A stretch of DNA of 64,000 bases from positions 372,001 through 436,000 of the forward strand of contig OY740795.1 in assembly GCA_963514005.1 (NCBI GenBank), in the 5' to 3' direction. Position numbers and translations under genes: made by a program. Each line of letters starts with the position of its first letter. The first letter of the stretch is position 1. Under the pieces are notes generated by a model. The model saw only the letters and a program-made list of their open reading frames with translations, had not been told where the DNA came from and made no database searches. Origin of the DNA: Raja brachyura (Eukaryota). This document shows positions 3,653 through 60,786 of the stretch, in pieces.

Positions 3653-3916
3653 CAATGGGCGTGAGGTATTTCGAAAGCAGTGCCGCTATGTTAAATCAAC
3701 AACTGCGTATAACGTTGCTTTTTGCAATTAAGTCGTGGGATTTCGTGGTACACATGTTAAAGTTTGTTGTTAGTGCAATAATCTGATGGAGTGGAGATAT
3801 CCTGTGGACGCAGTGGCGTTTCCGCTTGCAGCAAATGGTTTCCGGCGCCATTGCCTGCGCCACAATGATCTACATAGCTGAACATCTGCAGCAGATGTGT
3901 CTCAGAAACCTGCAGC

Positions 3917-3955
3917 AGTTATTGTACGAGTCTGCACACAGTTCCCAACACTGTG
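3917..3955 (-). promoter_or_regulatory. Recombination signal sequence of V1 (23-RSS)
   Basis: Minus strand: CACAGTG - 23 nt (ttgggaactgtgtgcagactcgt) - ACAATAACT, immediately after YYCAV. Confidence 0.93.
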
Positions 3956-5434
3956 TGACTGCACAGTAATATATCGCCATGTCAGACATCCGTAGCCTCG
4001 AAATAGTCATCTGATATTTTTTCGTTGACTGCTGAACTTCGTCAGAAAACCGCTCACGAGCGAAATCAGCCTTATAGTCATACTGTCCGCCAGTATGTCT
4101 CCGGACCAGAAACTCCGGGTGACCGTCGGGGTACTGGCGGTACCAGAACAAGTAGTAACCATCCTTGGCAAAGGTGCAGGTTAAAATGGCGTTTTCCCCC
4201 TCTGTATGCGTAAGAGAGGTCTTCTCTTGGGTCACGGAATCAGCATCAACCCGACCTGGAATGCATTAAGCGGAGCGTTTATTTGACATACATTTTCAAA
4301 ACTGAACGCAAAAGACCGGACCGAATATGTTACAACAATAATTATATTTACGGCAGATAGTCAGTCCTTACATATCTCACAGACGGGCAAATTTATCGTG
4401 ACGCTCACTCACTCTTTCGTCGGAGTGCACCGCCATCGGTCACATACCACTCTCCCCTCGTGTTCTATTCTGGAATCTGTTTGATTTATTAATAATATAT
4501 AGCTCTATTGTCCCGTGTGCGGAGCCGTTACATCTTTCCTTAATAAATAATATTCTGTCCCTTCCTGGATGATTTACCGGCGTCCATAGAATCAAATAGA
4601 CATAAATGAGACCTTGAAAGAGGTCGACATGAAAGAGACCTTTCGACCCAACTGGACCCAAAGTTAGCCCCAGTTACCGCGATAGGCGGACATCTCTTTT
4701 TACCTTCCCTTCTCTGTGTACCTGTCCAAGTGTCTTTCAGATGCCCATTATAGAACCTGTCTCAACTACCCGGCAGCTCAAGTTCAATAAGTGACCACCC
4801 TTTGTGTGATAAAATGCCCCTCAGATTACTGGAAAATTATTCCGCTTAGATCAATATCCTCTAGATCTAAATCCTATCGAACCCCTTTCTCTTGGTGAAA
4901 GAAAACGGTGCATTCATCCTATCTATTTTCCTTATGATTTCATGCACCTCCAAAAGTTAATCTCTGTGCTTCAAGGATTAACATCCCACGCTGTCCAACC
5001 GCTCCATATATCTCAAGCGATCGAATCCCGGGTAATATCGTTGTAAACCATCCATACACGCTTTCAGAGAATGCGTAAACCATACATACACGCATTCCAG
5101 CGGCATGACACCCTTTCCATAGCATTATTCCCAAACAGACCACAATGCATGAAATGCGGCTTGATCACCCATGATACCTGCTGATCGCGAAATGTCAATG
5201 CAACGGAGATGCAAGTCTTCCAATGTTGATTGAATTGCTCGTTCAACCATTTCTCAAACTTATTTTTCTTACTAGAAACGCAGAATACGTGTTAGATAGT
5301 AAGTCTGGTCCAACATATGAGCCACATAAGTTGAACGACGCCATCTTTCTGCAAAAACGCCACTGTTTACGAAAATTAATGTTCTTACTGATAATGAATG
5401 TCGCCCACATGACAGTATGTACCATGAGGCGCAT
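3956..5434 (-). CDS. TCR alpha/delta-type V gene segment V1 (leader exon 5389-5434, V exon 3956-4255), apparently intact
   Basis: Leader MRLMVHTVMWATFII + a|gtaag; acceptor ttccag|gtcggg. Spliced ORF ...SRVDADSVTQEKTSLTHTEGENAILTC..YLFWYRQYPDGHPEF..RFS..MTISRLRMSDMAIYYCAV has both Cys and the Trp; 23-RSS follows. Confidence 0.9.
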
Positions 5435-9967: not shown

Positions 9968-10006
9968 AGTTATTGTACGAGCCCCCAGCCCACTCCCATT
10001 ACTGTG
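9968..10006 (-). promoter_or_regulatory. Recombination signal sequence of V2 (23-RSS, heptamer variant)
   Basis: Minus strand: CACAGTA - 23 nt - ACAATAACT; nonamer and spacer end (ctcgt) identical to V1. Confidence 0.88.
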
Positions 10007-13000
10007 AGCCTCACTGCACAATGATATACCGCCGTGTCAAACAGCTGCAAATTCGAGATCGCCAAATGATGTATTTTGCTTGAACGCTGAACGGAATCAG
10101 AAAAGCGGGTCCGAGCGAATTCTGCCTTGAAATCTAAATTGGCTTCGGTGAAACGACCGACCGCAATTTCCGGTTGCTTGCTTGGGTACTGGCGGTACCA
10201 GAATAAGTGCGAAATATCGCCGGTGTATGTGCAGACTAAAGTTGCAGTTTCTCCTTCTGCCCTTGTCAGTGTGAGATCCCGCTGAGACACAACGTTTCCA
10301 TTGCTCTGACCTGGAACACAGTTAAATAATTCGTGACATGGAACATTAGTTTGAACTTAAATAGTGCTAGCAGTATTTGGAGGGGTCAATAACAGTGGGT
10401 TAAATATAGGGCGGGACAGTGGTGCAGCAGTAGAGTTGCTGCCTTAAAGCACTTATAGAGGCAGAGACCTGGGTTCGATCCTGGTTACGGGTGTTTGTCC
10501 GTACGGAGTTTGTACGATATTCCCGTGTCATGCGTGGAGTTTCTCAGAGAACTTCCGTTTCCACCCACATTCTAAGACGCACAGATTTGTAGGTTAATTG
10601 TCTTGGTATAAAAAATAAATAAAAATGTCCCTAGGGTAGGATGGTACTAATGTGCGGGGATGGTTAGTCGGTGCGAACTCGTTGCGCCGGATGGCCTGTA
10701 TCCGCGCTGTGTCTCAAAACTAAATTCAACTAAACTAACCGAGTAGAATTGTGTTTCATGGGTAAATAGGATTGCGCGTGCATAAATCCCAGGACATGTC
10801 TCCACACCTCTCTTTGACATACACAACTTACATCCCTACATTTCACTCGAAGTGACCACCTATTTATACTGTCCCTGCTACACTATTTGCATCAGTTTGT
10901 AACACTACAAAAAACCATCTAAGCATTCCACGTAATATTGTTCTCCTCTATGTCCGGACGGATTATGTGAGATGTATAACGATAAACTGTAATTAGAGCT
11001 TAGAACAGAGATGAGTGTAGCACATAAATAGGCCATTCAGCGCACAATATCCGTTCCAAGGATGACGTAGATAAGCAACTCTGCTTTACCAGCTTGTACC
11101 GTTCCCTGCCTAGCCATGTGCATCTCCGTAAATCTTTCAATGCCACTATCTTATACGGCTCGACCACGGCTGTCTCATGTACACAGCACACTCTGTGTAA
11201 AAAAATACCTGCCGTACACCACTCCGTTAAACTTCCTCCCTCTGACCTTAACGCTACCCCCTCTTATTCTCGCAATTTCCACCCTGGAAAAAATGTCCCG
11301 ACAGGGTATGCGCATCGTAATTTGATGCGCTGGTATCAGGTCTCCAGCTTCCAACATTCCCGAGAAAACATTGCAAGTTTCTTTTTCAACTTTTCCTTAT
11401 TGCTAATCCATGCAGCATGCTGGTAAATTGTTACTAAGCTGGATGTTTTTCCTCTGTGCAACACCTTGATTAGCTGTTTGCTTACTGGAGAATAATACCA
11501 CATTCTTTCTGGTGGCATAATCTCATGGCCCTCGATTCACCTACTCTGGGCACCTACTCTGTATCTACCTTATCTATTCCTTTTATGATTTTACGCAGCT
11601 CAATAATAATAGCCCTCATTCTATTGCGCTCCAAAGAACGGAGTCCCAGCATACTCAATCTCCCCAGAGAGCTCAGACACTTTAGCCTAGAAACATCTTT
11701 GTCAATCTTCTCTGAACCCCTTTCAGCTTGACAACATCTTTCCTATAACATGTTGCTCAGAACTGAACTCAATACTCCATGTGCGGCCTCGACTGATACT
11801 CTGACTGATGAAGGACAATGTGCCACACGCCTTGTGCGACTCCACATTCAATAAACCACGCACCTGTACTCCAATACCCCTCTGCTCTAAACCATTCTCT
11901 GGATCCCTAGCATTCATGGAGCAGGACCCGCACGTTCGACTTCCCAAAATGCAACACGTCACATTTCTCTTATTAAATTCCATCAATCATTCCTCAGCCT
12001 ACCTGGCTGGTCGTTCAAGATCCTGTTGCAAATTTGCATAACGATTTAACTCTATCTAAAACCACCCATTTATGTATTATCAGCAAACCTGCGAATCTTG
12101 CCGTGTATGTTCTAATCCAAATCATTGACATAGATGAGAAACGGTAACGGGCCGAGCACCGAACCCTGAGGCACACAACTAGTCACAGGCATCCAGTCCG
12201 AGAAGCCTCCATGCGATATCACAGTCTGCTTCCTTCCATGAAGCCACTTTTCTTTCCATTCAGCTATCTCTCCTTGGATCCCATGCGATCTTATCTTCCA
12301 GAGTAGCCTACCTGTGCGGAAGCTTGTCCAATGCTTTGCTGAAGTCCATATATACGATATCTGCAGCTTTGCGCTCATCGACCTTTTTGATCACGTCTTC
12401 CAAAAACACAATCAGATTTGTGAAACACGACTTCCCACGTACAAACCCATGCTGACTATCCCTAATCAGTCCTCAGCCGTCTAAATGCCTGTATATCCTA
12501 TCCATCATCATACTCTCGATTAACTTTCCAACAAAAGATGTTAAGCGCACTGTCCTACAGTTGCCAGCACCTACCCTGCAGCCCTTAATGAATAGAATCA
12601 CAACAATTGTTACCCATCAGTCTTCCGGAATATCTCCAGCATTTGAAGACGACTCGTAAATCTAAACAAAAAAAACATCCCTTGTTTCCCACAATGTATT
12701 CGGATACATCTTAGGTTATTGTCAATAGAAAACATAGAAAACATAGAAATTAGGTGCAGGAATAGGCCATTCGGCCCTTCGAGCCTCCACCGCCATTCAA
12801 TATGATCATGGCTGATCATCCAACTCAGTATCCCGTACCTGCCTTCTCTCCATACCCTCTGATCCCCTTAGCCACAAGGGCCACATCTAACTCCCTCTTA
12901 AATATATCCAATGAACTGGCCTCAACTACCCTCTGTGGCAGAGAATTCCAGAGACCCACCACTCTCTGTGTGAAAAAATTCCTTCTCATCTCGGTCCTAA

Positions 13001-17099: not shown

Positions 17100-17138
17100 G
17101 GTTTTTGTTCGGGTCAGTTATACGTCGGTGGCAGTGTG
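17100..17138 (-). promoter_or_regulatory. Recombination signal sequence of V3 (23-RSS)
   Basis: Minus strand: CACACTG (variant heptamer) - 23 nt - ACAAAAACC (consensus nonamer). Confidence 0.85.
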
Positions 17139-17619
17139 CGGTTCATGACAAAGAGGTATACGGCAGAGTCGGAGATCGCGGACTTGCAGATCATTCGCTC
17201 GGTATTCTTGGTCGTTTTATTGAACATAGAAGAGATTCGGTCTGTGAGGTCTCTCGTTCTAGTTTCTGTCCCTCTTGTAATCTGAAGCAAGTAATAAGGA
17301 GGCTGACCAGGGCGCTGGATGTACCAGTAGGCATGTGGGTATGGATCGGTTGTTTTCGAGGTGCATGTTAGGTTGTTGTTACTTCCCTCTTCGGACATAA
17401 TTTGTCCCACCAGTTGTTCCACTGAGTCTTGCAGGCTCCAATCTAATAAAAGGCAATACAACTGTCATCAAGATTTCCTTTCTCAAACAAGCTATTTTTA
17501 TTCTAGCAAGATAAACATCAGTATTAATAAGGTCAAATTAACCCTGCAATTTTAATGGCAAGTAAATCCTCACCAAGAAATAACGCAATGATAAGGAGCG
17601 GCGCTAACCGTTTCTTCAT
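17139..17619 (-). pseudogene. TCR alpha-type V segment V3 (leader 17574-17619, V exon 17139-17442); open frame but lacking the second conserved Cys
   Basis: Leader MKKRLAPLLIIALFL g|gtgag; acceptor tttattag|att. Exon WSLQDSVEQ..EEGSNNNLTC..AYWYIQRPGQPP..RIS..SAISDSAVYLFVMN has YLF in place of YYC. Confidence 0.85.
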
Positions 17620-23481: not shown

Positions 23482-24701
23482 ATGAGAGATGTCATTGTTT
23501 TCACGCTCTGTGTCTATTTATTCCGTGAGTATCTGTCAAACGCGAATTGGATAAACAAAGAACAACTTCACATCTGAAACTACAGGACAATCTTTTCGCT
23601 CTCGCTGCTTTTAAATGGGCCGAGCGGCGCGGCGTTGTAGCGGGCCATGGGAGACGACAGTGCGGATTTTTTTTCGAGAGTTTTAACTGGAAAGGTGTTT
23701 AACTCAAATAAGAGCAAGTTACTTCACAATAGGTGTCCATTTAGGCCTATGGAAGTGCCATTCCACGCCAAGATTTTCATAGAGGTACACAAAAGGCTGG
23801 AGAAACTTAGTGGGTGGAACAGCATCTAAGGAGCGAAGGAAATAGGCAACGTTTCGGGCCGAAACCCTTCTTCAGCCTGATGGGGGGTGGGGGGGGGGGG
23901 GGGGGGGGGGAGGGCGCGGGGAGAAGAAATCGAAAACAAATATTTTCATAGACGCCACCGAACTGAAGGCTACGCCAGAGACACGATGGAAGTGCAAGAT
24001 GCTGGAATCTTGAGCAAAACGCAAAGTGCCGGAGGAACTCAGCGGGCCAGACAGCATTTGTTGAGGGAATGGACAGGCGGAGTCTCCAGTGTGTGTGGCC
24101 ATTGCTTCAGACTGGAGAGCACGTTTGTGCTCGGGAAGGCGGCGGCATCCATTCCTTCAACAGTTTGTCGCTGTCCTGCTGACATGGTGATTCTACATTT
24201 CCCAAGGCCGAGTCTGATCCTCTAGAATACTTGTTCATTGCCCTTATTGTCAGCTTATATTTGATCACGGAAATATCATTGTCGCGACCTGTTCTTCCGG
24301 CCTGGCGCTTTTCCCAAACCAACTTTTAAAATGTTGCTTAAGTGTGATTTGTACTGATGAGTTTTATGTTTTTTCCTGAAACGTGTCACAGGTCCGAGCT
24401 CTGGGGGTTCCGTAACGGAACTCAAGCCTTCAGCGAGAAAGAGAGAAGATGAAGTGGTGACCATGTTTTGCAATTATACCACGACAGAAACCGCTTATTC
24501 TTTATTTTGGTTCAGAAAACAGGCAGAGAATGGGTTCGAGTTTATTGCGCGGATGAAGTCTTGGATGACTGAAGAAGGGAGAGATGAGGAATTCCGCACC
24601 CGCTTTTTCCAGAAACACGACATGAAGTCCAAATCCATCAGCTTGAAGATATCAGGGTTACTGATAGCCGATTCCGCTGTGTATTACTGCGCTCTCGAAG
24701 G
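23482..24701 (+). CDS. TCR alpha/delta-type V gene segment V4 (leader 23482-23524, V exon 24392-24701), apparently intact
   Basis: Leader MRDVIVFTLCVYLF c|gtgagt; acceptor tcacag|gt. Exon PSSGGSVTELKPSARKREDEVVTMFCNYTT..YSLFWFRKQ..RFF..SISLKISGLLIADSAVYYCALE. Confidence 0.9.
23786..23882 (-). repeat. Penelope terminal-repeat fragment with a minimal hammerhead-ribozyme motif, in V4 intron
   Basis: Minus strand: CTGAAGA-agggtttcggccc-GAAAC-GTT-gcc (hammerhead core boxes CUGANGA and GAAA around a 3-bp helix II). Confidence 0.6.
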
Positions 24702-24739
24702 CACAGTGATGGAAAACTGCTTTTACCACCACAAAAACC
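24702..24739 (+). promoter_or_regulatory. Recombination signal sequence of V4 (22-nt spacer)
   Basis: CACAGTG - atggaaaactgcttttaccacc (22 nt) - ACAAAAACC. Confidence 0.93.
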
Positions 24740-25159
24740 TCCCGTGCCTGTGCTGTGTAAATCATGCCTGTCATCGGACTCGCGGGGAATCGCCAGGTTG
24801 CGCCGCAATGCCGAGCGCACGAAACGTTGGCACATACCCAGAGGAAATTAGAAAAACCTCGGAATAAACTGCAACCGTTTCCACGAAGAGCAAATGAGAA
24901 CATTTGAATGAAAACACAGTGGAAATTATTACGGGACGCACCATTCGCAAATAACACGACAAGAATAAAGGGGACGGTTAGACATTTAGGGCAACCCACC
25001 GAGGATAAACCTCTGTAACCTCTTCCCACCCACGTGGGCGAATGGCTCCAGAGCCGATGGGGCATCTTGGTAAGCATGGATAATTTTGGCCAAAGAGCTG
25101 CTTTCCTGCTATATGACCCTGCGTCTCAGGTTGCATTATTCTCGTTCCATAGATATATT

Positions 25160-33440: not shown

Positions 33441-33570
33441 NNNNNNNNNNNNNNNNNNNNNNNNNNNNNNNNNNNNNNNNNNNNNNNNNNNNNNNNNNNN
33501 NNNNNNNNNNNNNNNNNNNNNNNNNNNNNNNNNNNNNNNNNNNNNNNNNNNNNNNNNNNNNNNNNNNNNN
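33441..33570. other. Assembly gap (N run)
   Basis: 130 N. Confidence 1.
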
Positions 33571-42145: not shown

Positions 42146-42615
42146 ATGCGTTTCTTCGGCATCTGTGTTGTGTGGGGAGCGTTTCTAACAGGTAATTCTG
42201 GATTAAAATGTTCAGTTCCCCTCGCTCTCCTCTGTCAGGCTTTGGCATGAGTTGTTCAATCTCATGGCCTTCTGTGTCTGTTCTTATCTCAATATATTTA
42301 TTTTACAGTCACGATTCACGGCGAATCTGTCACACAGCCACTGCCCTCGGCGACGAAGACAAAAGGAGAAGCGGTGACTTTAACCTGTAACTATGATACC
42401 ACATGGACTGCATATACTTTATTCTGGTACCGACAATATCCAGGCATGCAGCCCGAATTTACAATGTGGAGAGACACCAACGAATATGAAGAAAAGGCCC
42501 AATACGCTGATACACGTTTCTCTATTGAGCTCAATCCCGCGACTAAGTTCACAAGCTTGAGCATCTCAGGGCTGGATCTCAGCGACTCTGCAGTCTATTA
42601 CTGCGCACTGAGGCG
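42146..42615 (+). CDS. TCR alpha/delta-type V gene segment V5 (leader 42146-42191, V exon 42309-42615), apparently intact
   Basis: Leader MRFFGICVVWGAFLT g|gtaatt; acceptor ttttacag|tc. Exon TIHGESVTQPLPSATKTKGEAVTLTCNYDTTWTAYTLFWYRQYPGMQPEF..RFSIEL..TSLSISGLDLSDSAVYYCALR. Confidence 0.93.
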
Positions 42616-42653
42616 CACAGTGATGGAAATAAGTTAAGCCCCTTACAAAAACA
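42616..42653 (+). promoter_or_regulatory. Recombination signal sequence of V5 (22-nt spacer)
   Basis: CACAGTG - atggaaataagttaagcccctt (22 nt) - ACAAAAACA. Confidence 0.92.
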
Positions 42654-44162: not shown

Positions 44163-44351
44163 AACTTATTCTGAAAACCTATTTCCTTCGGCGCAAGAGG
44201 CTGAGTATCTACGCTCTCATAGGTAGATGTTTATGCTTCCAGCGGAATGTGTAATTTATTTAATTGGCGGACTGAACGTCATGTTATCTCACATTAATTC
44301 CTCGTGTACAGTGCTTCTTCTAGAATTGGGTGGCATTACCCCTTCTTTAGC

Positions 44352-48670: not shown

Positions 48671-50017
48671 CTCGTCCCGTCTTTGTCAAACATTGATCGG
48701 AGAGAGATGGACCCCACTCGTCCATTCGCTCGACAGATGCGGCCTGACCCGCTGATTTCTTTCAGTTCTCTTTTTTGATCAATATTTAACCACCGTTCCT
48801 TTATACATGGAAAACGTGGGGGTCACCATTCGAACTGACCTCTGCGTGGTCAGCTATCGGAACTGTCTGTAGTTCAGGGTGGGAGGCAGAGTAGGGCGTC
48901 GGTGGTTGTGCAGACGTTTCCATGTACAACGCACATGCTCAGTCTGAACAGTCGCCCACTAAAGCTCACTGTTCATTGTTTTGATCGCGAGTGGCGCATC
49001 CGTGAGGGTTGCTGGCTCTTGGAACCAAAGCCCCGCGTTCGGTTCAGACCTCCGGTGCTGTTTGTCCGACGATTACACTTTCTCCCCGAGATCACTCGCG
49101 TGTCTTCCAGGTGAGCCGGATTACTCCCACATCCTAAAAAGATGAATGTCTGGAGGTTAATTGCCCTTTGTAAATCGCCCGCATTATGCAGGGAGGTGAT
49201 GAGAGAATGGATTAAGAAACGATCCCGTGAACGCGAATTTGATGGTCAGCATGGTCACGGTGGGCAGAAGAGCCTGCTTTAAACCTACATATTTCAATGA
49301 TTAATTGATATCGGCACGACTGGAGCTCCCACAGCTTCACAATCCCACATAACCCCGGAATACACTGAGTGAAGAAGGATTCAGATCCGACACGTCGCAT
49401 GGCCGTTCCCGCCGCAGCAGTTGCGTGACCGGCTGCGTTACTCAAACACATTGTTATTTAATCTTGTTCTCTGACGTGTTCCCAATATTGTACGGAAAGT
49501 GTAATCCCATTCATTACTGATGAATGACGGGAAACCGCAATACCGATATGTGATTTGATTTTCTCTAAACGAATAATCTAGCAATGTGTGCATCTCCGGA
49601 TTGATTCTGGTTTAAATGAAAGCAAAATGTCAATTTATCTCTTGCTCTCTGTCACCCTGTTGTTAGTACAGATTCATGTTCCATTTCGTAATTATTTCAA
49701 TCATCATTCTGCAGTATTATTTTCTGTGTTGTGTTTATAATCGTAACAACCATGGATTGTTGCATGATACTTTTTATTAACCTTTTTCATTTTAGTGCTA
49801 ATTAGACTCTTTGTAAACATGATGTGAAATATCTCTCGTTGAGACATGGACCACAAGAAACCAAATCGAACCCCAGCAAAACCTGACGTTCGACAACAGA
49901 GAGCCTTCAGAATGGTGGAATAATTACGACCACCATTTGAATTCGTTGGTGCATGTCTCTGCTTCTCACCGCAATATCTTCTTTCATTCTTTCCCAGTAA
50001 ACCTGATGTCGATTGCA

Positions 50018-50267
50018 GCCACGGTGGCGCAGCGGTAGAGTTGCTGCCTTACAGCCCTTGCAGTGCCAGTGACCAGGGTTCGATCCCGACTACGGGTGCT
50101 GTCTGTATGGAGTTTGTACGTTCTCCCCGTGACCGCGTGCGTTTTGTCAGAGATCCTCGGTTTCCTCCCACACTCGAAAGGCATACAGATTTTTAGGTGC
50201 GGGGATCGCACGGACTTGATGGGCCAAAGCACCTGTTTCCTTGCTGTATGTCTAAACAAAACTAAAC
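50018..50267 (+). mobile_element. V-SINE inserted in the GPCR exon
   Basis: cacggtggcgcagcggtagagttgctgcc..gggttcgatcccgactacggg..taaacaaaactaaac. Confidence 0.88.
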
Positions 50268-51332
50268 TTAAGCGGTAGGAAGTGTGGTCTCTCCAAAATG
50301 CATCACGTGTTGCCTGTTGGCCATGGCGACGGCGGACTTCTCCGTGAACGTGTGCGAAGCGATGCTACATATATTTGGTGACTTCTGTTGGCGAGGGTTT
50401 GACGTGCTCTACAATCTAGTGTGCAGATTAATTCTCTTTCTTACTCATCTAGCTATCGACTGTTCTATTTGGTTCACGGTCGCTTTCACCTTTTGATCGA
50501 TTTGTGGCCATTCGCACTTACAAACTCAAAACACGCTACTGCACCGTGAAAACCACGGTTATGTGTGTAGTGACACTGCGCGCGTTCTCCTGTTCAAGAA
50601 TGTCCCCTGGCAATTTGCAGTTAAGTCTTATTCTATGTAATTGGGGATTGTCTCGATGATGCCATGTGACAATCCACCAATATCTGAAAGAGAGTGAATT
50701 ATTAGGTGTTGAAATATCAGTAAAATATATTGAAGAGTCCATTCGATCTTTAAAAAATGGAAGGCCTCAGGCCCATATGGCTTAAACACTGAATTTTATT
50801 TTAAAAATCATGGCCTGATTTCTCCTCGCCTATACACATTATATAATTACGCCTTTACTCAAAAGAAACTGTCAGAAACTTTCAAAGAATCAACAAAAAC
50901 ACTTATACCGAAAACGGATATAAGGGCCTTGAGAACCCAGGTTCATATTGAGCAATTGCTCTCTTAAATACTGATCAGAAAATATTAACGAAAATGTTAG
51001 CCCATAGATTAAGTTTAATGATTCATAAATTAATATATCCCTATCAAACAGGTTTTCTTCCAAAACATTATTTATTTTATAATCTGAGACGGTTATTTAA
51101 AATTATATATTCAAAAAGAATCGGTAATGTAGATTTAGCAGTCATCTCGTTAAATGCTGAAAAAGCATTTGATCAGGTGGTTGGCCCTATTTATTTTCCG
51201 TGGTGGAACATTTTCAAATGGGTGAGAAGTTGTGCAGATGGGTTAAGCTTTTATATACAGCTAGAATATTGACAAACCAAATGTTATCACCTAAATTTAA
51301 TTTATCTATAGGTGGGAGACAACGATGTCCGT

Positions 51333-51820
51333 TATATAACCATATAACCATATAACAATTACAGCACGGAAACAGGCCATCTCGGCCCTTCATGTCCGTG
51401 CCGAACAACCTGTTTCCCTTAGTCCCACCTGCCTGCACTCATACCATAACCCTCCATACCCTTCTCATCCATATGCCTATCCAATTTATTTTTAAATGAT
51501 ACCAACGAACCTGCCGCCACCACTTCCACTGGAAGCTCATTCCACACCGCTACCACTCTCTGAGTAAAGAAGTTCCCCCTCATGTTACCCCTAAACTTCT
51601 GTCCCTTAATTCTAAAGTCATGTCCTCTTGTTTGAATCTTCCCTATTCTCAAAGGGAAAAGCTTGTCCACATCAACTCTGTCTATCCCTCTCATCATTTT
51701 AAAGACCTCTATCAAGTCCCCCCCCCTTAACCTTCTGCGCTCCAGAGAATAAAGACCTAACTTATTCAACCTATCTCTGTAACTTAGCTGTTGAAACCCA
51801 GGCAACATTCGAGTAAATCT
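51333..51820 (-). mobile_element. CR1 3' fragment nested in L1
   Basis: ORF 51419-51808; (catataac)n tail; same family as 44352-48670. Confidence 0.85.
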
Positions 51821-52459
51821 AGTTATCTCCGTTATTATTCGCCCTAGCTATTGAACCACAGGCAGAATGTGTTAGAGTCTACCCTGAAATATATGGATAT
51901 AATACTAAAAATACAGTCAATACAATTTCTTTGTGCGCATATGATGTATTTCTATACACTACAAATCCAGAAACCAGCATTCCAAACATGTTAAATCTTA
52001 TATCTCAATTTGGCTCATTTTCGGGATATAGAATTAATTGGGACAAAAGTGAAATTACTGTAGCTTTTTCAATGAATTCCGATATATCTCCCAATTAAAA
52101 AAAAAGAAGTTGATTCAATAGCCACAAGTTTTATTTGGGATAATAAGAACCAGAGAATAAGTAAAACACATTTATGTAAATCGAAGACGAATGGAGGATT
52201 AGTTTTACGAATTTATTTATTTTATTTTTGGGCAGCTAATATTAAAAATATTAAAAATATTAACTTCTGGTTGGAAGATATGCATCAGCAATCAGGTTGG
52301 TTGAAGATGGAAAAGGAAGATTGTTTACCTTTTGAAATTGGCTCGATTCTGTTAGCTCCCAAAAAACTGAATTAAAAAACCTATTGTGAAAATCCTCTAA
52401 TATATAGTGGAATACGAATTTGGAAACAATTAAAAAAGAATTTAAAATTAGATAATTTA

Positions 52460-53805
52460 GTCAATCAAAGTCAAGTCAAAAGAGTTTATTGTCATGTGTC
52501 CCTGACAGGACAATGAAAATCTTTCTTTGCATAGCACAACAGAACATAGAAGGCATTGACTACAATTCTATACATAAATACATCCATGACTTAATAAATT
52601 AATAAAGTGCAAATAGCAGATGGAGGGATATTAATGTTCAGAGTTCCGAGCCAAGTTTAATAGCCTGATGGCTGTGGGGAAGTAGCTATTCCTAAACCGG
52701 GTTATTGTCGTCTTCAGGCTCCTGTACCTTCTACCCGAAGGTAGCAGGGAGATGAGTGTGTGGCTAGGGTGGTGTGGGTCCTTGATGATGCTGCCAGCTT
52801 TTTGAGGCAGCGACTGTGATAAATCCCCTCGATGGAAGGAAGGTCAGAGCCGATGATGGACTGGGCAGTGTTTACTACTTTTTGGAGTATTTTCCTCTCC
52901 AGGGCGCTCAAGTTGCCGAACCAAGCCACGATGCAACCAGTCAGCAAGCTCTCTACTGTACACCTGTAGAAGTTAGAGAGAGTCCTCCTTGACAGACCAA
53001 CTCTCCGTAATCTTCTCGGGAAGTAGAGACGCTGATGAGCTTTCTTAATAATTGCAGCTGTGTTCTCGGACCAGGAAAGATCTTCACAGATGTGCACGCC
53101 CAGGAATTTGAAGCTCTTGACCCTTTCAACCATCGACCCGTTGATATGAACAGGACTGTGTGTCCCCATCCTGCTCCTTCCAAAGTCCACAATCAGTTCC
53201 TTGGTTTTGCTGGTGTTGAGGGCCAGGTTGTTGTGCTGGCACCATATGGACAGTCGCTCGATCTCTCTTCTATACTCGGACTCATCCCCATCAGTCATAC
53301 GTCCCACAACAGTGGTGTCGTCAGCGAACCTGATGATGGAGTTCGCGCTATGACCGGCTACGCAGTCATGAGTGTAGACTGAGTACAGCAGGGGGCTGCG
53401 CACGCAGCCCTGAGGTGCTCCCGTGCTGATTGTTATCGAGTCTGACACATTTCCACCAATACGAACAGACTGTGGTCTGTGGAGGAGGAAGTCGAGGATC
53501 CAATTGCAGAGGGATGCGCAAAGACCCAGTCTGCGAGTTTGGTAACCAGCTTGGAGGGGATGATTGTGTTAAATGCCGAGCTGTGGTCAATAAATAGCAG
53601 CCTGACATATGAGTTGTTGTTGTCCAAGTGGTCCAGAGCGGAGTGGAGGGCCAGCGAGATCGCGTCCACCGTTGATCTGTTGTGGCGGTAAGCGAACTGC
53701 AGTGGGTCCAGGTGTTTGTCGAGGTAGGAGTTGATTTGCGCCATGATCAAGCTCTCGAAGCACTTCATCACCACAGGCGTTAGTGCCACAGGTCGATAGT
53801 CATTT
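52460..53805 (-). mobile_element. Rex1/Babar-like LINE nested in L1
   Basis: [49 protein letters not shown]; (tcaag)-type tail at 52460-52480. Confidence 0.88.
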
Positions 53806-54613
53806 ATCACTCTTTCTCCCCATTGTAAATACTCCTTCATTTAAGCCCGCTGTGTTGGACAAAGATTTTGTACAATGGAAAAATTATGGAATTAAAAATG
53901 TGGGATATCTTTATAGAAAATGTCTTTATCTTTCATTTCAGGAGTTACAATAGAATTATGGACTACATTTAAATTTTTTTTTAGATATCAACGACTTATA
54001 GATTATGTTAAATTGCATACACAATAATATAGAACTAAAGAGCCAGAGACCCTTGATGAATGTTTGAATAAACATCCTAATACAGCTAAATTAATATTTC
54101 ACATTTATAATATCCTTTTTGATAGAGTGGTGCCGTCGACGGAATTATAAAGACAAGCATGGGACAATGAATTAGCTCAACCTATAATGAAAGATATTTG
54201 GGATGAAAGTGTACAACATATACATCAATGCTCGTTAAACGCCAGACATTCTTTAGTATGAATTTAAAGTACTAAATTAACTGCACTACTCTAAAACAAA
54301 ATTGAATAGAATGTTTCCAAATATCCCCCCCATCTGTGACCAATGTCAATATTCAGAAGCTAATTGAACTCATACTCATCTTCCTGCTACCTACAGTTTA
54401 ACGGGCTCACAGTCAGACACATTTTAGCAGCCAATCGGGTCCACAGGAGTGTCCGGGAAAGGAACAGCGGGGATAAAGATAAAGACCCCGACATAGCGAA
54501 CCGCAGATGATCGTCGTTTTACTTCTTGGAATCTGCACAAGTTTTACCATGCTCTGGGCCACAACGGTCGCATCTTTTGTTTATTACCGAAGGGTTACAT
54601 CCGTTCACATCAA

Positions 54614-56037
54614 ACTAGACAAAAATGCTGGAGAAACTCAGCGGGTGAGGCAGCATCAATGGAGCGAAGTAAATGGGCAACGTTTCCAAACCCTTCTTCA
54701 GACTGATGTGAGGGGGGCGGGGTTGAGAAGAAAGGAAGAGGTGGATCCAGTGGGCTGAGGGAGAGCTGAGAAGGGGAGGAGACAGTAGGGTCTACCTGAA
54801 ATTAGAGAAATCAATGTTCATACCGCTGGGGTGCAAACTGCCTAAGAGAAATATGAGGTGCTGCTCCTCCAATTTGCGATGGTCCTCACTCTGGCCATGG
54901 AGGAGGCCCAGGACAGAAACGTCGGATTCGGAATGGGAGGGTGAGTTAAATTGCTGAGCCACCAGGAGATCAGGTTGGCTGTTGCGAACTAAGCGGAGGT
55001 GTTCGGCGAAGCGATCACCAATCCTACGCTTGGTCCCACTAGATGTAGAACAGCTGAAATCTAGAGCAGTGGATGCAATATATGAGGGTGGAGGAGGTAC
55101 AGGTGAACCTATGCCGCAACTGGAAAGACTGCTTGAGTCCTTAAATTAAGTCAAGGTGGGAGGTAACGCGACAAGTGTAGCATTTCCTGCGGTTGCAAGG
55201 GAAACTGCCCGGAGAAGGGGTGGTTCGGGTGGGAAGAGAGGAATTGACCAGGGAGTTCCGGAGGGAGCGGTTTCTCCGGAAGGCAGAGAGGAGAGGAGAT
55301 GGGAAGATGTGGCAAGTGGTGGGTTCGTGTTGTAAGTGGCGGAAATGTCGGAGGTTATTTGTTGAATGTGACGGCTGGTACGGTGCAAGGTGAAGACACG
55401 GGAGACTCGGTCTTTGTTGCGAGTGGGGAGATGGGGAGTGAGAGCAAAGTTGCGGGGAACAGAAGGAACCCTGGCGAGAGCTTCATCTATAGTCGAAGAG
55501 GGGAACCCCCGTTCCCTGAAGAATGAGGACATCTCCGATGCCATGATTTGGAACACCTCATCATGGGTGCAGATGCGGCGTAGACGGAGGAGTTGCGGAG
55601 GGGATGGAGTCCTTACAGGAAGCAGGGTGGGAAGAAGTGAAGTCCAGATAGCCATGGGTGTCAGTGGGTTTATAGTGGTTGTCGGTCAGCTGTCTCCATC
55701 GCAGGTGACAGAGGGCCACTGTAAATTGGAGGAGCAGCAGCTCATAGTTCGCTTGGGCAGTTTGCACCCCAGCGATATGAACATTGACTTCTCTAATTTC
55801 AGGTAATCCCTGCTTTCTCTTCCCCTTCTCAGCTCTCTCTCAGCCATCAGACTCCACCTCTTCCTTTCTTCTTCCCCCCCCCCCCCCACCGCACCCTCAC
55901 AGCAGTCAGAAGAAGGCTTTCGACCCGAAACTTTGCCTATTTTCGTCGCTCCATAGATGCTGCCTCACCCGCTGCGTTTCTCCAGAATTGTTGTCTACCT
56001 TCGATTTTCCAGCATTTGCAGTTCCTTCTTAAACACT
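54614..56037 (-). mobile_element. Penelope-like element with inverted terminal repeats and 10-bp TSD
   Basis: RT C-terminal motif YKPTDTHGYLDFTSSHPASCKDSIP..LRLRRIC; 54616-54887 inverted at ~55710-55998; TSD ttcacatcaa at 54604-54613 and 56038-56047. Confidence 0.88.
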
Positions 56038-58999
56038 TTCACATCAAGGCGTGGATTAACCAACATTTCACTTTTGAGCGATTTGATGTCATGCTGTATC
56101 TGCTAAGCACCTGCACAATCACAGCCATTTACACCATGACCCAGCGGAAGTTCACAGAGCAACTGCTCCGCGCGTCATAATACCCATTTACCCATTTACT
56201 CTAATTGCAAATTAGGTAAACGTATGTACAGGTGAGATGCCTGTGTTATCAATTTGTTTTCCTGTACTTAGATCAGTTCTCTCAACGAAGACATTGTGTT
56301 GTCGATGCTAGACCCTGAATGGAGTTATCTCCACTGCAGATCTTCCTAGTTGCACAGCTGATCGAGTTGCTGCATCACAGCGCCAGAGATCTGCCTTCAC
56401 TCCTGACCGCTGGTGCCCTCTCGTTGGGGTTTCCACGTTCTCTTGAGTTCCCTCTTTGCTCCGGTGACCTCTATTTTTTCAAAGCATGCAGGTGCAGCAG
56501 GCTGTGAAGAAAGCGAATGGCATGGTGGCCTTTATAACAAGCGGAATCGAATCTAGGAACAAAGAGGTCCTTCTGCAGTTTACAGACCCCGAGTAAGACC
56601 ACAACTGGAGTTATGTGTGCAGTTTATGTCCGTGCATTTGAGGAAGGACATTCTTGCTATTGTGGGAGTGCAGCGTAGGTTTACACGGTTAATTTCCGGG
56701 ATGGCGGGAATGTCATATGCTGAGAGAATGGAAAAGCTGGGCTTGTACACCCCGGAGTTTAGAAGGATGAGAGGGGATCTCATTGAAACATATAAGATTG
56801 TTAAAAGCTTCGACACGCTGGAGGCAGGAAACATGTTCCCGATGTTGGGCGAGCCCAGAACCAGGTCCCTCAGTTTATGAATAAGAAGTAAGCCATTTAT
56901 AACGGAGACGAGGAAACACGTTTTCTCACAGAGTGGTGAGTCTGTGGAATTTCATTTCGGAGTCACGTGAGTGACTTCGTGAAGAACCCGCCGGCACGCA
57001 TGCGCGACATATCGTCGCAACGCATTGCTGCCGACGGCTGGAGGGGAGCGCGGCTCCCCACCAGCCCTTCAGAGTGCCGACTCAGGTAAGGCTAAGCCCC
57101 CTAGAGTTGGTGTTCCTGTTGGGGGGAGTGTGTTCTCTCCCTACAGGAACGTGGAAACCGTAACGGCCAGGATATCTGCAGGAGTCGCCGGCCAATTATC
57201 CCGGAGCCCTCCTCAAGGGCTGCACCTGCGAGTCGGGTCGGGAAATAGGCGTGGTAGTCGGGGAACCCTGTTGGTACAGGGCCCGACCCGCCGATACATC
57301 GGAGCTCCAGTGGGAGTTGGTGTTCCTGTTGTGGCGAGTGTGTTCTGTCCTCACAGGTACGTGGAAGCAGTAAGGGCCAGGACATCCGCAGTGCTGGTTC
57401 GAGGAGCAGGAGCTCCAGTGCTGATTCGAGGAGCAGGTAGACCCTGTCTCCGTATCGGGGTCGCCAACGGGCTCGTTGGTCGACTTGGGCTAGGGCTCGC
57501 GTGCTGCTGCACGGCCCTTCTCCCAGAGCCCTCAGAGAAGAGCGAGGGATGGAGCCCGGAAGCCTAACCCTTTAGGGGCAAAGGCGTCACCTGCCGCTAA
57601 ACTGCGGACTGGTGTCATGGCGGGACTCAAGTCCACTGGGAGACCAGTCAGGACCAGTGGACTCCCCAACCACCGAGGCCGGGACGGGTCATTTGGGAGG
57701 AGTCCCGCCACGGTCGCCGAGTCCCCCATGGATGGGAGGACGAGACCATGCGTCGGCAAGGTCCATGATGTGGGCAGCCGGCAAGCCCGCGCGGGCGTCG
57801 GGTCACCGTGCTGAGGCATTAGGTGCCGACTCTCCAACGCGTTTGCCCTCCGTGGCAGCGGGATCAAGCTCCGCCGAGGAGGCGTTTGAGCGTACCTCCC
57901 GCGCGGGAATCGCTCAGCTTTGCTGCGGCGGCTGGCAGCGACAACTCTCGGCACCGGGTTCACCTCGACGAGGTGCGGGCCGATGAACGGAGCCTCAGCA
58001 GTTCAGCAGAACATGAGGACTCCGTCCACCCGAGTTCTAAGGGCGAGGGGCGTATTGGCCAGGATGGAGCGGATGTTGGAGCTCCTCCTGCAACAGAATC
58101 AACGGGAGGAAGCATCCAGCTCCAGTGGGCACAGGGAGGTTTCACCATCGTCAGCAGGAGCCTGAGGCAGCCAGAGGATTGTCAGAGACATCGAGACTAC
58201 CCCTCAACCCCAAACTGGCCGCCACCGTGGAATTCCTGACCAACCATCAGCTCCAGGAGGAGGTCCTATCGGAGGCCATAAAACGGGCAGAAAGCCCAGC
58301 GAACTGCCACTCCCTTCAACGAGCCCATAGTCAATACGCCACGGTCGCCGAGTCCCCCATGGATGGGAGGACGAGACCATGCGTCGGCAAGGTCCATGAT
58401 GTGGGCAGCCGGCAAGCCCGCGCGGGCGTCGGGTCGCCGTGCTGAGGCATTGGGTGCCGACTCTCCACCGCGTTCGCCCTCCGTGGCAGCGGGATCAAGC
58501 TCCGCCGCGGAGGCGTTGAGCGTACCTCCCGCGCGGGAATCGCTCAGCTTTGCTGCGGCGGCTGGCAGCGACAACTCCCGGCACCGGGTTCACCTCGACG
58601 AGGTGCGGACCGATGAATGGAGCCTCAGCAGTTCAGCAGACCATGAGGACTCCGTCCGCTCGAGTTCTAAGGGCGAGGGGCGTATTGGCCAGGATGGGGC
58701 GGATGTTGGAGCTCCTCCTGCAACAGAATCAAAATTTTCGGGGAAGACCTCCCGAAGAGGGTCAAGGGGCGGGATGACCACGCTAAGACGGTGGGACTCA
58801 TGCGGTCACATATCTCGACCAGGCAGCAGGCCAGGGAGTGCTATTTTTCAGGCCACAAGGCCCTGCCGTTAGGCCAGCAAGGACCTACGCTCCAGCTCCG
58901 CCTCAATTTCAGCATCCAGCACCTCCACATCCGGCCATGCATATCAAGGGCCGCCGATAACCATGAAGGTAAGGTGGTCTGGATTTCATGCACCTGCAT

Positions 59000-60780
59000 G
59001 TTTAACCTCACATGTTGGTGGGAGACTACGGCTCTTTCCGGGGGCATGCGGTACCATCACGTCTGATGAGTTTACCTTACAAAGTATTCAAGGCCATGCG
59101 ATTGAATTCGTCAATGGTGACATCCCTCCATCCCAGCATATGCAGATCGGAAATTTACACTGTGCAGCAAGAGCGGCAGTAGGCTATGCTGAAAAATTTA
59201 CAGTCACAAGGAGGGATGGAGGATGTCGGGTTATTTTTGATTTGAACCATTTGAATACTTTTGTAGAATATACCCATTTCAAACTGGAAACGTTCCAGAC
59301 ATCTAACTTCTTGGGTTATGGGGGCTGCTTTGTGGCATGCATTGATTAAAAGATGCATGCTATTCAGTATCCATTCAGAAATACCACATGAAGTTCTTGC
59401 CATTGACCTGGATGGATCAGCTCTGGCTATACAGAGCTTTGCCAAATGGGCTTACACAACCCTAGATTATTTCTAAATTGCTCCAATCAATACTGGCTAC
59501 ACTAGGAGACAAAATCACATAGTGTTGCCCTATCTAGGTGATATCCTTATTTATTGGGAATCAGCCGAACTGGCAGTTTCAGCCACCGTGGAAATGTTTT
59601 CAGGGAATGGGGTTCATTATCCATCCAGATAAATCAACGTCCTGCCCTTCACGGGTTAAGGGTATCTGGGGTTACGGTGGATTCCAATCACGTGAGGGCC
59701 ACCATACCAACTAACTAGGTTGGCGATGTCACCCAACTATGGTAGGGTCTAGCCTGGGCCAGTATACCATCAATTCGACAAACTACTAAGGTGATTGGCA
59801 AGATTGTAGCTTTTTTCCAGCTGCTCAATACGGGCCTTTGCATTATCAAAATTTGCAGAGAGCCAAGGTCTCAGCGTTAAAACTGAACGCTAGACATTTC
59901 GATAGACCAATGCAGCTGCCTTTCAAGGCACAGATTGAGTTACAATGGAAGATTGACAATATTTATGTCTCTCTTAAACCCATCATTTTGGCCAATCCGA
60001 TGGTATACTTACAAACAGACGCAAGCTCCCATGTCTGGGCAGCTACGGACAACTGCTCCAGTTGTGAGGGCAGATGGGACACCCTTGAATCTACCCTGTT
60101 GTTGTCACAAGGGATAAACTATTTGGAGACGCTGGGAGCATTTCACGGACTTCGAGCTTATTGTTCTAGCCTTACTGATGCTCATGTCCGTCTCCAAATA
60201 AATAATACCACTGCGGTGGCATATCTAAACCATATGGGCGGTACCAGGTCACTTTCATGTGATCAATTGGCAAATACAATTTGGCTCTGGTGTGTTCGAC
60301 GGAATATTTGGATTTCAGCTACTTGTTTCCCAGGTGAGCTCTATACAGTGGCTGACACCAGGTCACGCAAATTCTATGCCAACATCGAGTGGATGATGAA
60401 TCTCCAAATATCCGCTAAAATTACTGCCAAATTTGGTGAACCGGATATCGACCTCTTTGCGTCACGGTTGAACCATTAGGTACCAACATACGTTCGTGGG
60501 AACCCGACCCTGGGGCAATGGCGATGGATGCGTCTCGCTGGACTGGGGGAAATGGGTTTCTATGCATTTCCTCCATTTTGCCTCATCAGTCGGGTGTTGC
60601 GGGTAATCCAGACAGATGCTGCTAAGGGCATTCTTACCATACCCGACTGGCCTACGCAGCCATGGTATCCGGAGGTCCTTGATATGATCAGTCAACCTTG
60701 GGTCCTCTTAGAGGATTACCCATAATTGGTACAAACCCTGTGTCAGGGGGACCACATCCCTGCCACAGTCATCTAAACTT
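59000..60780 (+). pseudogene. DIRS pol: RT, RNase H and DAM-like methyltransferase domain
   Basis: GGCRVIFDLNHLN, ID*KDA, YRALPNGL, YLGDIL; LQTDAS, INYLE, NNTTAVAYLNHMGG; DIDLFASRLN, YAFPPF, PDWPTQPWYP. Confidence 0.88.
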
Positions 60781-60786
60781 GTTGGC

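What the first reader, a model, noticed from the sequence alone, without database searches (positions are those of the whole stretch)
49998..56204. Hidden GPR139-like GPCR pseudogene inside the TCR V array, broken by nested retroelements
Seen: four collinear plus-strand pieces covering the end of TM1 through TM4, the end of TM5 through TM6, and TM7 with the tail (KCGLSK, AMATAD, DCSIWFTVAFTF-DRFVAI, LTVRHIL, DP..NRR, TCT..IY..TQ.KF). They start at a clean splice acceptor and are separated by a SINE, an L1 (holding CR1 and Rex1) and a Penelope element whose 10-bp TSD restores the frame. Exon 1 was not found. Recalled knowledge: these motifs match the GPR139-like orphan receptors expanded in cartilaginous fishes, and mammalian TRA/TRD is bordered by olfactory-receptor GPCRs. 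Inference: a non-olfactory GPCR family may be interspersed and co-duplicated with TCR V genes in this lineage; I am not aware of this linkage being described.
Basis: partly seen in the sequence, partly recalled or inferred. Interest (0 to 1): 0.75.

Follow-up and report, generated by a model that had tools for sequence, protein, structure and literature searches.

The report
Dead orphan-receptor gene among TCR V genes
This is a long-dead copy of a shark-and-ray orphan receptor gene, broken by frameshifts and jumping-gene insertions, lying between T-cell-receptor V gene segments; it is real but not functional.

Summary
On the + strand, 49998-56215, lie collinear pieces of one class-A GPCR coding exon. 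A profile of 43 full-length relatives hits 5 of 3050 six-frame pieces of the window (E 9e-16 to 1e-5), all here and in family order; the next best has E 1.8.

- **Family:** the relatives are the large chondrichthyan family that NCBI labels "probable G-protein coupled receptor 139".
- **Damage:** a SINE, a truncated L1-like LINE holding two nested retroelements, and a Penelope-like element whose 10-bp duplication (54604-13 / 56038-47, 1434 = 3x478 bases apart) restores the frame. There are also at least three frameshifts, loss of roughly 35-50 codons (end of ECL2 and most of TM5), a premature stop and an 8-bp duplication.
- **Start:** the "splice acceptor" at 49996-97 sits where the family's gene models change exon. 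Exon 1 was not found.
- **Setting:** five TCR alpha/delta-like V segments lie in the window.
- **Age:** contigs of three other coded organisms carry the same SINE and Penelope junctions, so the gene has been dead for a long time.

The wider idea of co-duplication with V genes cannot be tested here, because the window holds one relic and no repeated V-GPCR unit. The family lies on many contigs in other species. The scan had already noted and followed up this interleaving elsewhere on the same piece of this genome.

The parts
49983..49997 (+). Pyrimidine-rich tract ending in the AG (49996-49997) of a splice acceptor; coding exon 2 starts at 49998
   Evidence: Sequence read. In about 40 of 49 family gene models with a non-canonical N-terminus, the sequence diverges exactly before (V)NL.AIVILS (my reading of the printed list). 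That places an exon boundary at this point in the family.
49998..50012 (+). Start of exon 2: end of TM1, (V)NLMSI
   Evidence: The N-terminal profile aligns PVNLMSI only; the match is too short to be significant on its own (E 4.6).
50013..50266 (+). tRNA-type SINE with an internal deletion, inserted between TM1 and ICL1
   Evidence: Aligns with three other copies in the window. Word depth is about 1.4e5 in the reads bin 50150-50348. No tRNA or Rfam hit. No TSD was recognised.
50268..50683 (+). ICL1, TM2, TM3 (with DRF) and TM4 up to the start of ECL2. Frameshifts at 50298 (A run), 50494 (T run) and about 50575
   Evidence: Profile positions 41-106 (E 9e-16) and 106-144 (E 4.6e-9). tblastn with P0002 covers 50296-50634 at 1.8e-14; P0055 reaches 50683.
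50684..54375 (+). L1-like LINE, truncated at both ends. Its 3' truncation goes with the loss of the receptor's ECL2/TM5 codons
   Evidence: RVT_1 halves at 50952-51269 and 51823-52095. A Cys-rich ORF2 motif is read at 54330-54370. The name L1 is recalled from motifs and was not tested.
51335..51822 (-). CR1-like 3' fragment nested in the LINE, splitting its RT domain
   Evidence: 86% identical to 44353-44832. It lies between RVT_1 positions 82 and 125 of the host LINE. The name CR1 is recalled and was not tested.
52455..53801 (-).
   Evidence: RVT_1 at 1.7e-13 and 5.9e-13. Contigs of two runs skip exactly 52454 to 53802, that is 1347 bases (table 5). The name Rex1 was not tested.
54376..54613 (+). 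End of TM5, ICL3 (DP..NRR), TM6 and the start of ECL3. A -1 frameshift at about 54508
   Evidence: Profile positions 193-232 (E 1.5e-10) and 234-268 (E 1.2e-5).
54604..54613 (.). Left copy of the 10-bp target-site duplication TTCACATCAA
54614..56037 (.). Penelope-like insertion made of two head-to-head partial copies: a minus copy from 54614 to about 55710 and a plus copy from about 55711 to 56037. Both 3' tails point outward
   Evidence: Inverted arms 54616-54887 and 55997-55711 are 82.6% identical. The GIY-YIG-type C-terminus is read. Nearest Atlas clusters carry GIY-YIG (0.94). BLASTP against the GIY-YIG-like part of P0016 gives 7e-8. More than 800 contigs per run break off at 54616. Pfam gave no hit.
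56038..56047 (.). Right copy of the target-site duplication
   Evidence: The spacing of 1434 bases equals 3 x 478.
56038..56215 (+). ECL3, TM7 (TCTITAIY) and the tail. Premature TAA at 56178-56180; 8-bp tandem duplication at 56182-56197
   Evidence: Profile positions 266-309 at E 1.9e-9. tblastn with P0028 reaches 56210. Sequence read.
42251..42634 (+). TCR alpha/delta-like V segment with RSS
   Evidence: V-set at 8.7e-15. V profile at 6.8e-36. Heptamer CACAGTG and nonamer ACAAAAACA. The best single-domain PDB hits are TCR alpha/delta.
24361..24864 (+). V segment with RSS
9973..10356 (-). V segment with RSS
3873..4265 (-). V-like segment
   Evidence: V profile at 1.3e-26. RSS not checked.
17117..17464 (-). 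V-like segment
   Evidence: V profile at 3.3e-18. RSS not checked.

Best explanation
A member of the large chondrichthyan receptor family labelled "probable GPR139" once sat here as an ordinary two-exon gene, inside the TCR alpha/delta V array. It most likely arrived by the local gene duplication that builds such families (inferred). It lost function and has since decayed as neutral DNA.

What is shown directly:
- A SINE landed in the TM1/ICL1 codons.
- A Penelope-like element landed in ECL3, leaving a clean 10-bp duplication.
- A LINE landed in ECL2 and later took in two more retroelements.
- Small frameshifts, a stop codon and an 8-bp duplication accumulated.

Inferred steps:
- One deletion removed both the 3' end of the LINE and the adjacent ECL2/TM5 codons.
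- The LINE arrived after the SINE and the Penelope-like element. Contigs of one other organism share the SINE and Penelope junctions but break off exactly at both LINE junctions.

The relic encodes no receptor, and nothing suggests any present function.
For: - **Family match:** five collinear, significant matches on one strand and none elsewhere in the window.
- **Class A GPCR:** phmmer of the 70-residue piece against 1.84 billion representatives gave 22 hits at E<=0.001, best 3.9e-12. I scanned ten of these against Pfam. All ten matched 7tm_1 at E<=0.01, and eight exceeded the 30.5-bit cut-off.
- **Family size and range:** 2459 relatives at E<=1e-10. Every named row among the 120 shown is a shark, ray or skate.
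- **Nearest solved structure:** the family profile's best PDB match is human GPR139 at 4e-13; the next is the PrRP receptor at 6.5e-10.
- **Disablements:** read directly from the sequence.
- **Transposons:**
- **Low copy number:** the receptor-only bins have word depth 77-281, against 1e5-1e6 in the transposon bins.
- **Age:** an organism B contig bridges the SINE/receptor junction (50197-50367, 8 differences). Others bridge receptor/LINE (50614-51035), and LINE/receptor plus receptor/Penelope (54326-54645). Organisms C and D bridge the SINE and Penelope junctions at about 90-94% identity (table 8).
Against: - The pieces alone give no Pfam 7TM hit (0 of 5) and no GPCR in the PDB, so the class-A assignment is transitive.
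- Identity to the nearest known relatives is only about 50-57%. I cannot tell whether this reflects decay or a subfamily that was not sampled.
- The contigs of the other organisms could be paralogous copies and not orthologues.
- No listed run is on record as RNA, so transcription is untested.
- Exon 1 and the promoter were not located.
- No TSD was found for the SINE or the LINE.
Confidence: 0.9

Rival explanations
1. The relic marks a real, selected association. GPR139-like genes are part of the duplicating unit of the TCR alpha/delta (and NAR-TCR) V array, and their intact members are used or co-regulated in lymphoid cells. This copy is one casualty of that birth-and-death process.
For: The relic lies 7.4 kb downstream of a V segment on the same strand, among five V segments. 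Unchecked scan notes report the same interleaving from about 308 kb before to about 503 kb beyond this window on the same piece. The disrupted copy is shared by several organisms, so the gene has been in this array for a long time.
Against: The window shows no repeated V-GPCR unit; only transposons repeat. The family is on many contigs in other species. There are no expression data. In mammals, OR genes among TRAV genes are regarded as neighbours in conserved synteny (PMC4574546, passages). A dead copy says nothing about use.
Confidence: 0.08
2. The gene is still functional. The transposons lie in introns and the four pieces are exons spliced together.
For: The pieces are collinear and on one strand. 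The Penelope insertion with one TSD copy is a multiple of 3 in length.
Against: There are frameshifts inside the pieces at 50298, 50494 and 54508. Roughly 35-50 codons of ECL2/TM5 are missing. Family proteins are continuous across all these points, and the only recurrent model break is before (V)NL. There is a premature stop at 56178.
Confidence: 0.01
3. The similarity is chance, or comes from hydrophobic low-complexity translation of repeats.
For: Pfam and PDB searches with single pieces were blank.
Against: Five pieces match in the right order with E down to 9e-16, against a next best of 1.8 among 3050 pieces. Family signature motifs are conserved (alignments). The receptor bins are low-copy.
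Confidence: 0.01

Closest known systems
Chondrichthyan "probable G-protein coupled receptor 139" gene family (NCBI automatic names; examples P0002 and P0028 of Heptranchias perlo, P0055 of Pristis pectinata, P0061/P0063 of Leucoraja erinacea)
   Same: The order of motifs is the same: KCGLSKCIT, AMA.AD, D.S.WFTVAFTFDRFVAI, NALTVRHIL, DP....NRR, S.CT.T.IY..TQ.KF, and the tail YPFTLI. The exon boundary before (V)NL is the same. Identity over the aligned pieces is 50-57%.
   Different: This copy is dead. It has insertions, frameshifts, a missing TM5 and a stop codon. The N of the family's NT.IY motif in TM7 is I here.
Human GPR139 (PDB 7vug, 9m42)
   Same: It is the best-scoring solved structure for the family profile, at E 4e-13 and 52 bits.
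   Different: It is only a distant relative; the next GPCRs are within about 10 bits. The 70-residue window piece alone does not find it. Orthology was not tested, so the name is a label of similarity.
Olfactory-receptor genes interspersed among mammalian TRAV genes (OR10G2 and OR4E2 in human; Olfr1507-1509 in mouse)
   Same: Class-A GPCR genes lying between TCR alpha V segments (PMC4574546, passages read).
   Different: It is a different GPCR family. In mammals there are two or three genes at the 5' edge in conserved synteny. Here, according to unchecked scan notes, many copies lie along the array.
Penelope-like elements (retroelements with a GIY-YIG endonuclease)
   Same: A GIY-YIG-type C-terminus, an inverted head-to-head pair of copies, and a short TSD. 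That inverted or tandem arrangements are typical of this class is recalled knowledge.
   Different: Only the C-terminal part is present. No RT domain remains, and Pfam GIY-YIG is not reached.

Membership tests
Class A (rhodopsin-like) GPCR, Pfam PF00001 7tm_1 | Significant match of the sequence itself to the 7tm_1 profile | tested here: not met
   0 of 5 pieces hit 7tm_1 at E<=10. The pieces are 38-70 residues long.
Class A (rhodopsin-like) GPCR, Pfam PF00001 7tm_1 | Significant homology to proteins that do match 7tm_1 | tested here: met
   One search gave 22 hits. All ten that I scanned match 7tm_1, and eight exceed the cut-off. Atlas features of the piece point to 7tm_1 fragment clusters at 0.93.
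Class A (rhodopsin-like) GPCR, Pfam PF00001 7tm_1 | D/E-R-Y/F motif at the end of TM3; NPxxY in TM7 | tested here: inconclusive
   DRF is present at 50495-50503, behind a frameshift. TM7 reads ITAIY where the family has NT.IY, so neither is a canonical NPxxY.
Chondrichthyan 'probable GPR139' expanded family | Collinear significant matches to a profile of full-length members | tested here: met
   Five pieces at E 9e-16 to 1.2e-5, covering profile positions 41-144 and 193-309 of 324.
Chondrichthyan 'probable GPR139' expanded family | Exon boundary just before (V)NL.AIVILS | tested here: met
   AG at 49996-97 follows a pyrimidine tract. About 40 of 49 non-canonical gene models diverge at this point. 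No genomic DNA of an intact member was available to check this directly.
Chondrichthyan 'probable GPR139' expanded family | Open reading frame through seven TM helices | tested here: not met
   Frameshifts, a missing TM5, a stop codon and three insertions. It is a pseudogene.
GPR139 orthologue | Orthology to vertebrate GPR139 (closest by tree, conserved synteny) | not tested
   The only evidence is that the family profile's best PDB hit is GPR139, at 4e-13 against 6.5e-10 for the next. No tree was built.
TCR alpha/delta V gene segment (the neighbours) | V-set domain followed by a heptamer, a spacer of about 23 bp and a nonamer | tested here: met
   V-set is above the cut-off for 3 of 3 segments. 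RSS were read. The best single-domain PDB matches are TRA and TRD chains. Two further V-like segments were found by profile only.
Penelope-like element | GIY-YIG endonuclease domain | tested here: inconclusive
   Pfam gave none. Nearest Atlas clusters carry GIY-YIG at 0.94 with 176 shared features. BLASTP against a GIY-YIG-like segment gave 7e-8.
Penelope-like element | Penelope-type reverse transcriptase | not testable with these tools
   The copies here are 5'-truncated and hold no RT region.

The most novel reading that the evidence does not exclude
The GPR139-like receptor family is a long-standing structural component of the skate TCR alpha/delta/NAR-TCR V array, present there since before several species split. 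Its intact members would then share the array's chromatin or enhancers and be expressed in developing T cells. That would be an amplified counterpart of the OR genes among mammalian TRAV genes. This relic would be one fossil of that co-evolving unit.
Probability: 0.08. Interest if true: 0.7.

Novelty: new member of a known kind. Interest (0 to 1): 0.3.

Why it matters
By itself this is a dead gene, so it matters little. Its value is as a dated marker. A copy of this receptor family was already inside the TCR V array, and already broken by a SINE and a Penelope-like element, before the organisms coded A to D diverged. The alternative is that the broken copy was later duplicated. Either way the neighbourhood of this family and the V genes is old.

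The interleaving of this family with chondrichthyan TCR V genes did not turn up in print in my searches. I saw only listings and abstract starts, apart from the passages read. The scan itself has already recorded and followed up the interleaving on other windows of this genome, so this finding adds one more instance and not a new phenomenon.

Tried and rejected
- **Single pieces against Pfam and the PDB.** Both were blank for GPCRs. The pieces are too short and this family is divergent.
- **A hidden N-terminus.** I considered that the N-terminus lies directly upstream, because RNIFF...PVN resembles the family's IYY...GVPVN. In that case the "acceptor" would be accidental. I rejected this. A profile of 51 N-termini aligns only PVNLMSI (E 4.6), and family gene models break exactly there.
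- **Exon 1.** No piece out of 3050 reached E<0.6. The best + strand candidate upstream (45653-45691, E 4.7) has nothing to support it.
- **Further receptor relics.** Weak tblastn hints at 25185-25430 and 44298-44504 were not supported by either profile. An isolated KCGLWKC motif at 901-954 (E 1.8 window-wide) has no collinear continuation.
- **tRNA and Rfam search of the SINE.** Nothing found.
- **Pfam on the Penelope pieces.** Nothing found.
- **A repeated V-GPCR unit in the window.** Only transposons repeat.
- **Expression.** None of the 21 listed runs is on record as RNA, so it stays untested.
- **Not tested or not seen.** I did not test the names L1, CR1 and Rex1. I did not see any supplements; the supplements of skate or shark genome papers might list this family's expansion.
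- **Joined model left out.** Each piece was searched apart, and the frame restoration was shown by arithmetic only.

Full report
**What is there**

The window also holds two runs of N (21468-21752 and 33441-33570), which I left alone.

**Is it more than chance, and is it a GPCR?**

Taken alone, the pieces fail the simple tests:
- 0 of 5 pieces match any 7TM family in Pfam, even at E<=10.
- The longest open piece (70 residues, 50284-50493) finds no GPCR among solved structures.
- A protein-language-model look-up of that piece did point to 7tm_1 fragment clusters (0.93, 169-171 shared features). That is a lead only.

The decisive step was an exhaustive phmmer of that piece against 1.84 billion cluster representatives. 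It gave 22 proteins at E<=0.001, the best at 3.9e-12 and 55% identity. I scanned ten of them against Pfam. All ten match 7tm_1 at E<=0.01, and eight exceed the 30.5-bit cut-off; P0001 and P0003 are fragments that fall below it.

tblastn of the full-length relative P0002 (371 aa) against the whole window finds four collinear + strand blocks and nothing else below E 1:
- 50296-50634 (E 1.8e-14)
- 54391-54507 with 54513-54590 (E 4e-13)
- 56037-56192 (E 1.5e-10)

A profile of 8 relatives and a cleaner one of 43 canonical full-length relatives both hit five six-frame pieces. In one search, out of 3050 pieces of 12 residues or more, these five cover profile positions 41-106, 106-144, 193-232, 234-268 and 266-309 of 324. 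Their E-values are 9e-16, 4.6e-9, 1.5e-10, 1.2e-5 and 1.9e-9. The next best piece in the window has E 1.8.

**Which family?**

A word-indexed search with P0002 found 2459 proteins at E<=1e-10 among 6430 candidates. Every named row among the 120 listed comes from a shark, ray or skate. The genera are Heptranchias, Pristiophorus, Heterodontus, Scyliorhinus, Mustelus, Stegostoma, Rhincodon, Cetorhinus, Chiloscyllium, Pristis, Mobula, Hypanus, Amblyraja, Leucoraja and Rhinoraja. Most rows are labelled "probable G-protein coupled receptor 139", and one row has no name. No chimaera appeared among those 120.

The 8-sequence family profile finds human GPR139 as its best solved relative (E 4e-13). The PrRP receptor (6.5e-10), NMUR2 and CCR5 follow. 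"GPR139-like" is thus a fair label of nearest similarity. I did not test orthology.

The relic is about 50-57% identical to the best relatives over the aligned pieces (for example 122 of 221 residues with P0028). Those 138 proteins were chosen by likeness to a Heptranchias protein, so closer skate relatives may exist.

**Anatomy, left to right (+ strand)**

1. **Acceptor (49983-49997).** A pyrimidine tract ends in AG at 49996-97. The coding sequence starts at 49998 with (V)NLMSI.
   - Family gene models support a real exon boundary here. There were 107 occurrences of the KCGLS motif in 138 proteins (35 proteins lack it). Of these, 58 are preceded by the canonical N-terminus and 49 are not.
   - By my reading of the printed list, about 40 of those 49 have unrelated sequence joining exactly before (V)NL.AIVILS. 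This includes tandem-gene fusions and read-through of pyrimidine tracts. Three are canonical variants my pattern missed, four are truncated, and two are unclear.
   - I had first suspected that the N-terminus lay directly upstream. A profile of 51 N-termini does not support that.
   - The same profile found no exon 1 anywhere in the window.
2. **SINE (50013-50266).** It aligns with three other copies in the window and has an internal deletion. I saw no TSD. About two codons of the receptor are unaccounted for at this junction.
3. **ICL1 to TM4 and the start of ECL2 (50268 to about 50683).** There is one extra base in an A run at 50298, one in a T run at 50494 just before DRF, and a further frame change near 50575.
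4. **LINE (about 50684-54375, + strand).** Its RT is in two halves (RVT_1 at 50952-51269 and 51823-52095).
   - It is split by a minus-strand element at about 51335-51822, which is 86% identical to 44353-44832.
   - Further on it is interrupted by a minus-strand RT element (RVT_1 1.7e-13). The limits of that element, 52455-53801, are given by contigs in two runs that skip exactly those 1347 bases.
   - The LINE ends inside its Cys-rich ORF2 region, so its 3' end is missing.
   - Profile positions 145-192 have no significant match. With the weaker P0055 alignment reaching 50683, I estimate that roughly 35-50 codons are gone: the end of ECL2 and most of TM5.
   - I infer one deletion that took out both the LINE's 3' end and these codons.
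5. **End of TM5, ICL3 and TM6 (54376-54613).** There is a -1 shift at about 54508.
6. **Penelope-like insertion (54614-56037).** It is flanked by the exact 10-bp duplication TTCACATCAA at 54604-13 and 56038-47, spaced 1434 = 3x478 bases apart. Excising it would therefore keep the frame ...VHIK|AW....
   - It consists of two partial copies head to head. The arms 54616-54887 and 55997-55711 are 82.6% identical in inverted orientation.
   - The minus copy reads through a zinc-finger-like linker and a GIY-YIG-type C-terminus.
   - Pfam is blank. Atlas neighbours carry GIY-YIG. BLASTP against the GIY-YIG-like segment fused into gene model P0016 gives 7e-8.
   - More than 800 contigs per run break off at 54616, which marks the element's end.
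7. **ECL3, TM7 and tail (56038-56215).** A TAA at 56178-80 sits where the family profile's consensus reads K. An 8-bp tandem duplication lies at 56182-97. Behind it the family tail YPFTLI.. can still be read.

**Surroundings**

Five V-set segments lie in the window. Three were checked and have a heptamer, a spacer of about 23 bp and a nonamer. All three pass Pfam V-set. For the one I searched, the best single-domain PDB matches are TCR alpha and delta chains, and one database relative is named TCR alpha/delta variable. The nearest V segment is 7.4 kb upstream on the same strand.

The window's self-comparison (77 pairs, the 60 longest read) shows only transposon repeats. It shows no repeated V-GPCR unit and no second receptor copy.

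**Reads**

Twenty-one runs were listed and none is on record as RNA, so expression is untested.

Contigs of four coded runs were laid on 50150-56100 at 85% likeness:
- **Copy number.** The receptor-only bins have word depths of 77-281, against 1e5-1e6 in the transposon bins. The receptor pieces are therefore low-copy.
- **Organism B.** Contigs at about 97% identity bridge four junctions: SINE/receptor (50197-50367), receptor/LINE (50614-51035), and LINE/receptor together with receptor/Penelope (54326-54645).
- **Organisms C and D.** Contigs at about 90-94% identity bridge the SINE/receptor junction (50197-50431; 50213-50431) and the receptor/Penelope junction (54405-54684; 54392-54644).
- **A break in organism D.** Two organism D contigs stop matching at 50682 and 54392, although the records run on for 100 and 158 letters. 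These are the two LINE junctions. That fits a copy without the LINE.

I read this as follows: the SINE and Penelope insertions are older than the LINE, and the gene was already dead before these organisms diverged. The caveat is that these contigs may come from paralogous copies made after the insertions. Organism A's own run also holds a 96.7% copy across the LINE/receptor junction (54076-54467).

**Earlier notes of the scan**

These are unchecked AI notes. The same interleaving of GPR139-like genes with TCR V and NAR-TCR units is recorded from about 308 kb before to about 503 kb beyond this window on the same piece, and on other pieces. Two follow-ups concluded that the layout is real and apparently undescribed. 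They also found that the family is spread over many chromosomes and that nothing links it to T cells.

My one search agrees on the spread. Among the 120 rows there are at least 9 different contig sizes for Heterodontus francisci and 22 for Heptranchias perlo.

**Literature**

Nothing on an expansion of this family, or on GPCR genes in a chondrichthyan TCR locus, turned up for any of these searches:
- GPR139 + shark: 4 papers, none relevant by title or abstract start.
- GPR139 + cartilaginous: 1 paper; the passages I read have the two words in unrelated places.
- "GPR139-like": 0 papers.
- NAR-TCR + locus + GPCR: 0 papers.
- "receptor 139" + expansion + fish: 12 papers, 9 listed, none relevant.
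- Two broader listings.

The mammalian precedent comes from passages of PMC4574546. OR10G2 and OR4E2 lie among human TRAV genes, Olfr1507-1509 in mouse, and there is conserved synteny in sheep. I could not see any supplements; those of shark and skate genome papers may list this family.

**Verdict**

The object is an old, thoroughly broken pseudogene with no sign of function. The attractive inference, a receptor family co-duplicating with V genes, is neither supported nor excluded by this window. The scan has already raised and followed it up elsewhere in this genome.

Noticed in passing
window 901-954 (+): An isolated peptide, SQLKCGLWKCRRPY, resembles the family's SRGKCGLSKCITRY (E 1.8 window-wide). 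tblastn with P0002 also touches 784-945 (E 2.1). No collinear continuation was found, so it is either chance or the last trace of a second relic.
   Followed up: partly
P0016 and P0018 (gene models of another species): Family members whose model runs from TM6 (..FILLW) straight into a GIY-YIG-like segment (WYIGETEQRLRQR..). This suggests a Penelope-like element inserted into another copy of this family, at a different site from the one here.
   Followed up: partly
window 54076-54467, run X1 (record 6): The organism that best holds the window also has a contig across the LINE/receptor junction with 13 differences in 392 bases. This is either a second, near-identical copy of the broken gene or a divergent haplotype.
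   Followed up: no
window 57706-58102 and 58337-58732: A direct repeat at 96.7% identity inside a G+C-rich stretch (0.53-0.55 at 56-60 kb) with long overlapping ORFs on both strands. Its nature is unknown.
   Followed up: no
window 59838-61750 (+): ORFs of 213, 208 and 114 residues that look like parts of a large mobile element. Not searched.
   Followed up: no
window 3873-4265 (-) and 17117-17464 (-): Two further V-like segments, found only with the V profile (E 1.3e-26 and 3.3e-18). Their RSS and reading frames were not checked.
   Followed up: no
window 54616 / 56035 (table 5): In all four runs, 20-24 contigs join 56035 back to 54616. Other copies of this Penelope-like element therefore stand in tandem, tail to head.
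   Followed up: no
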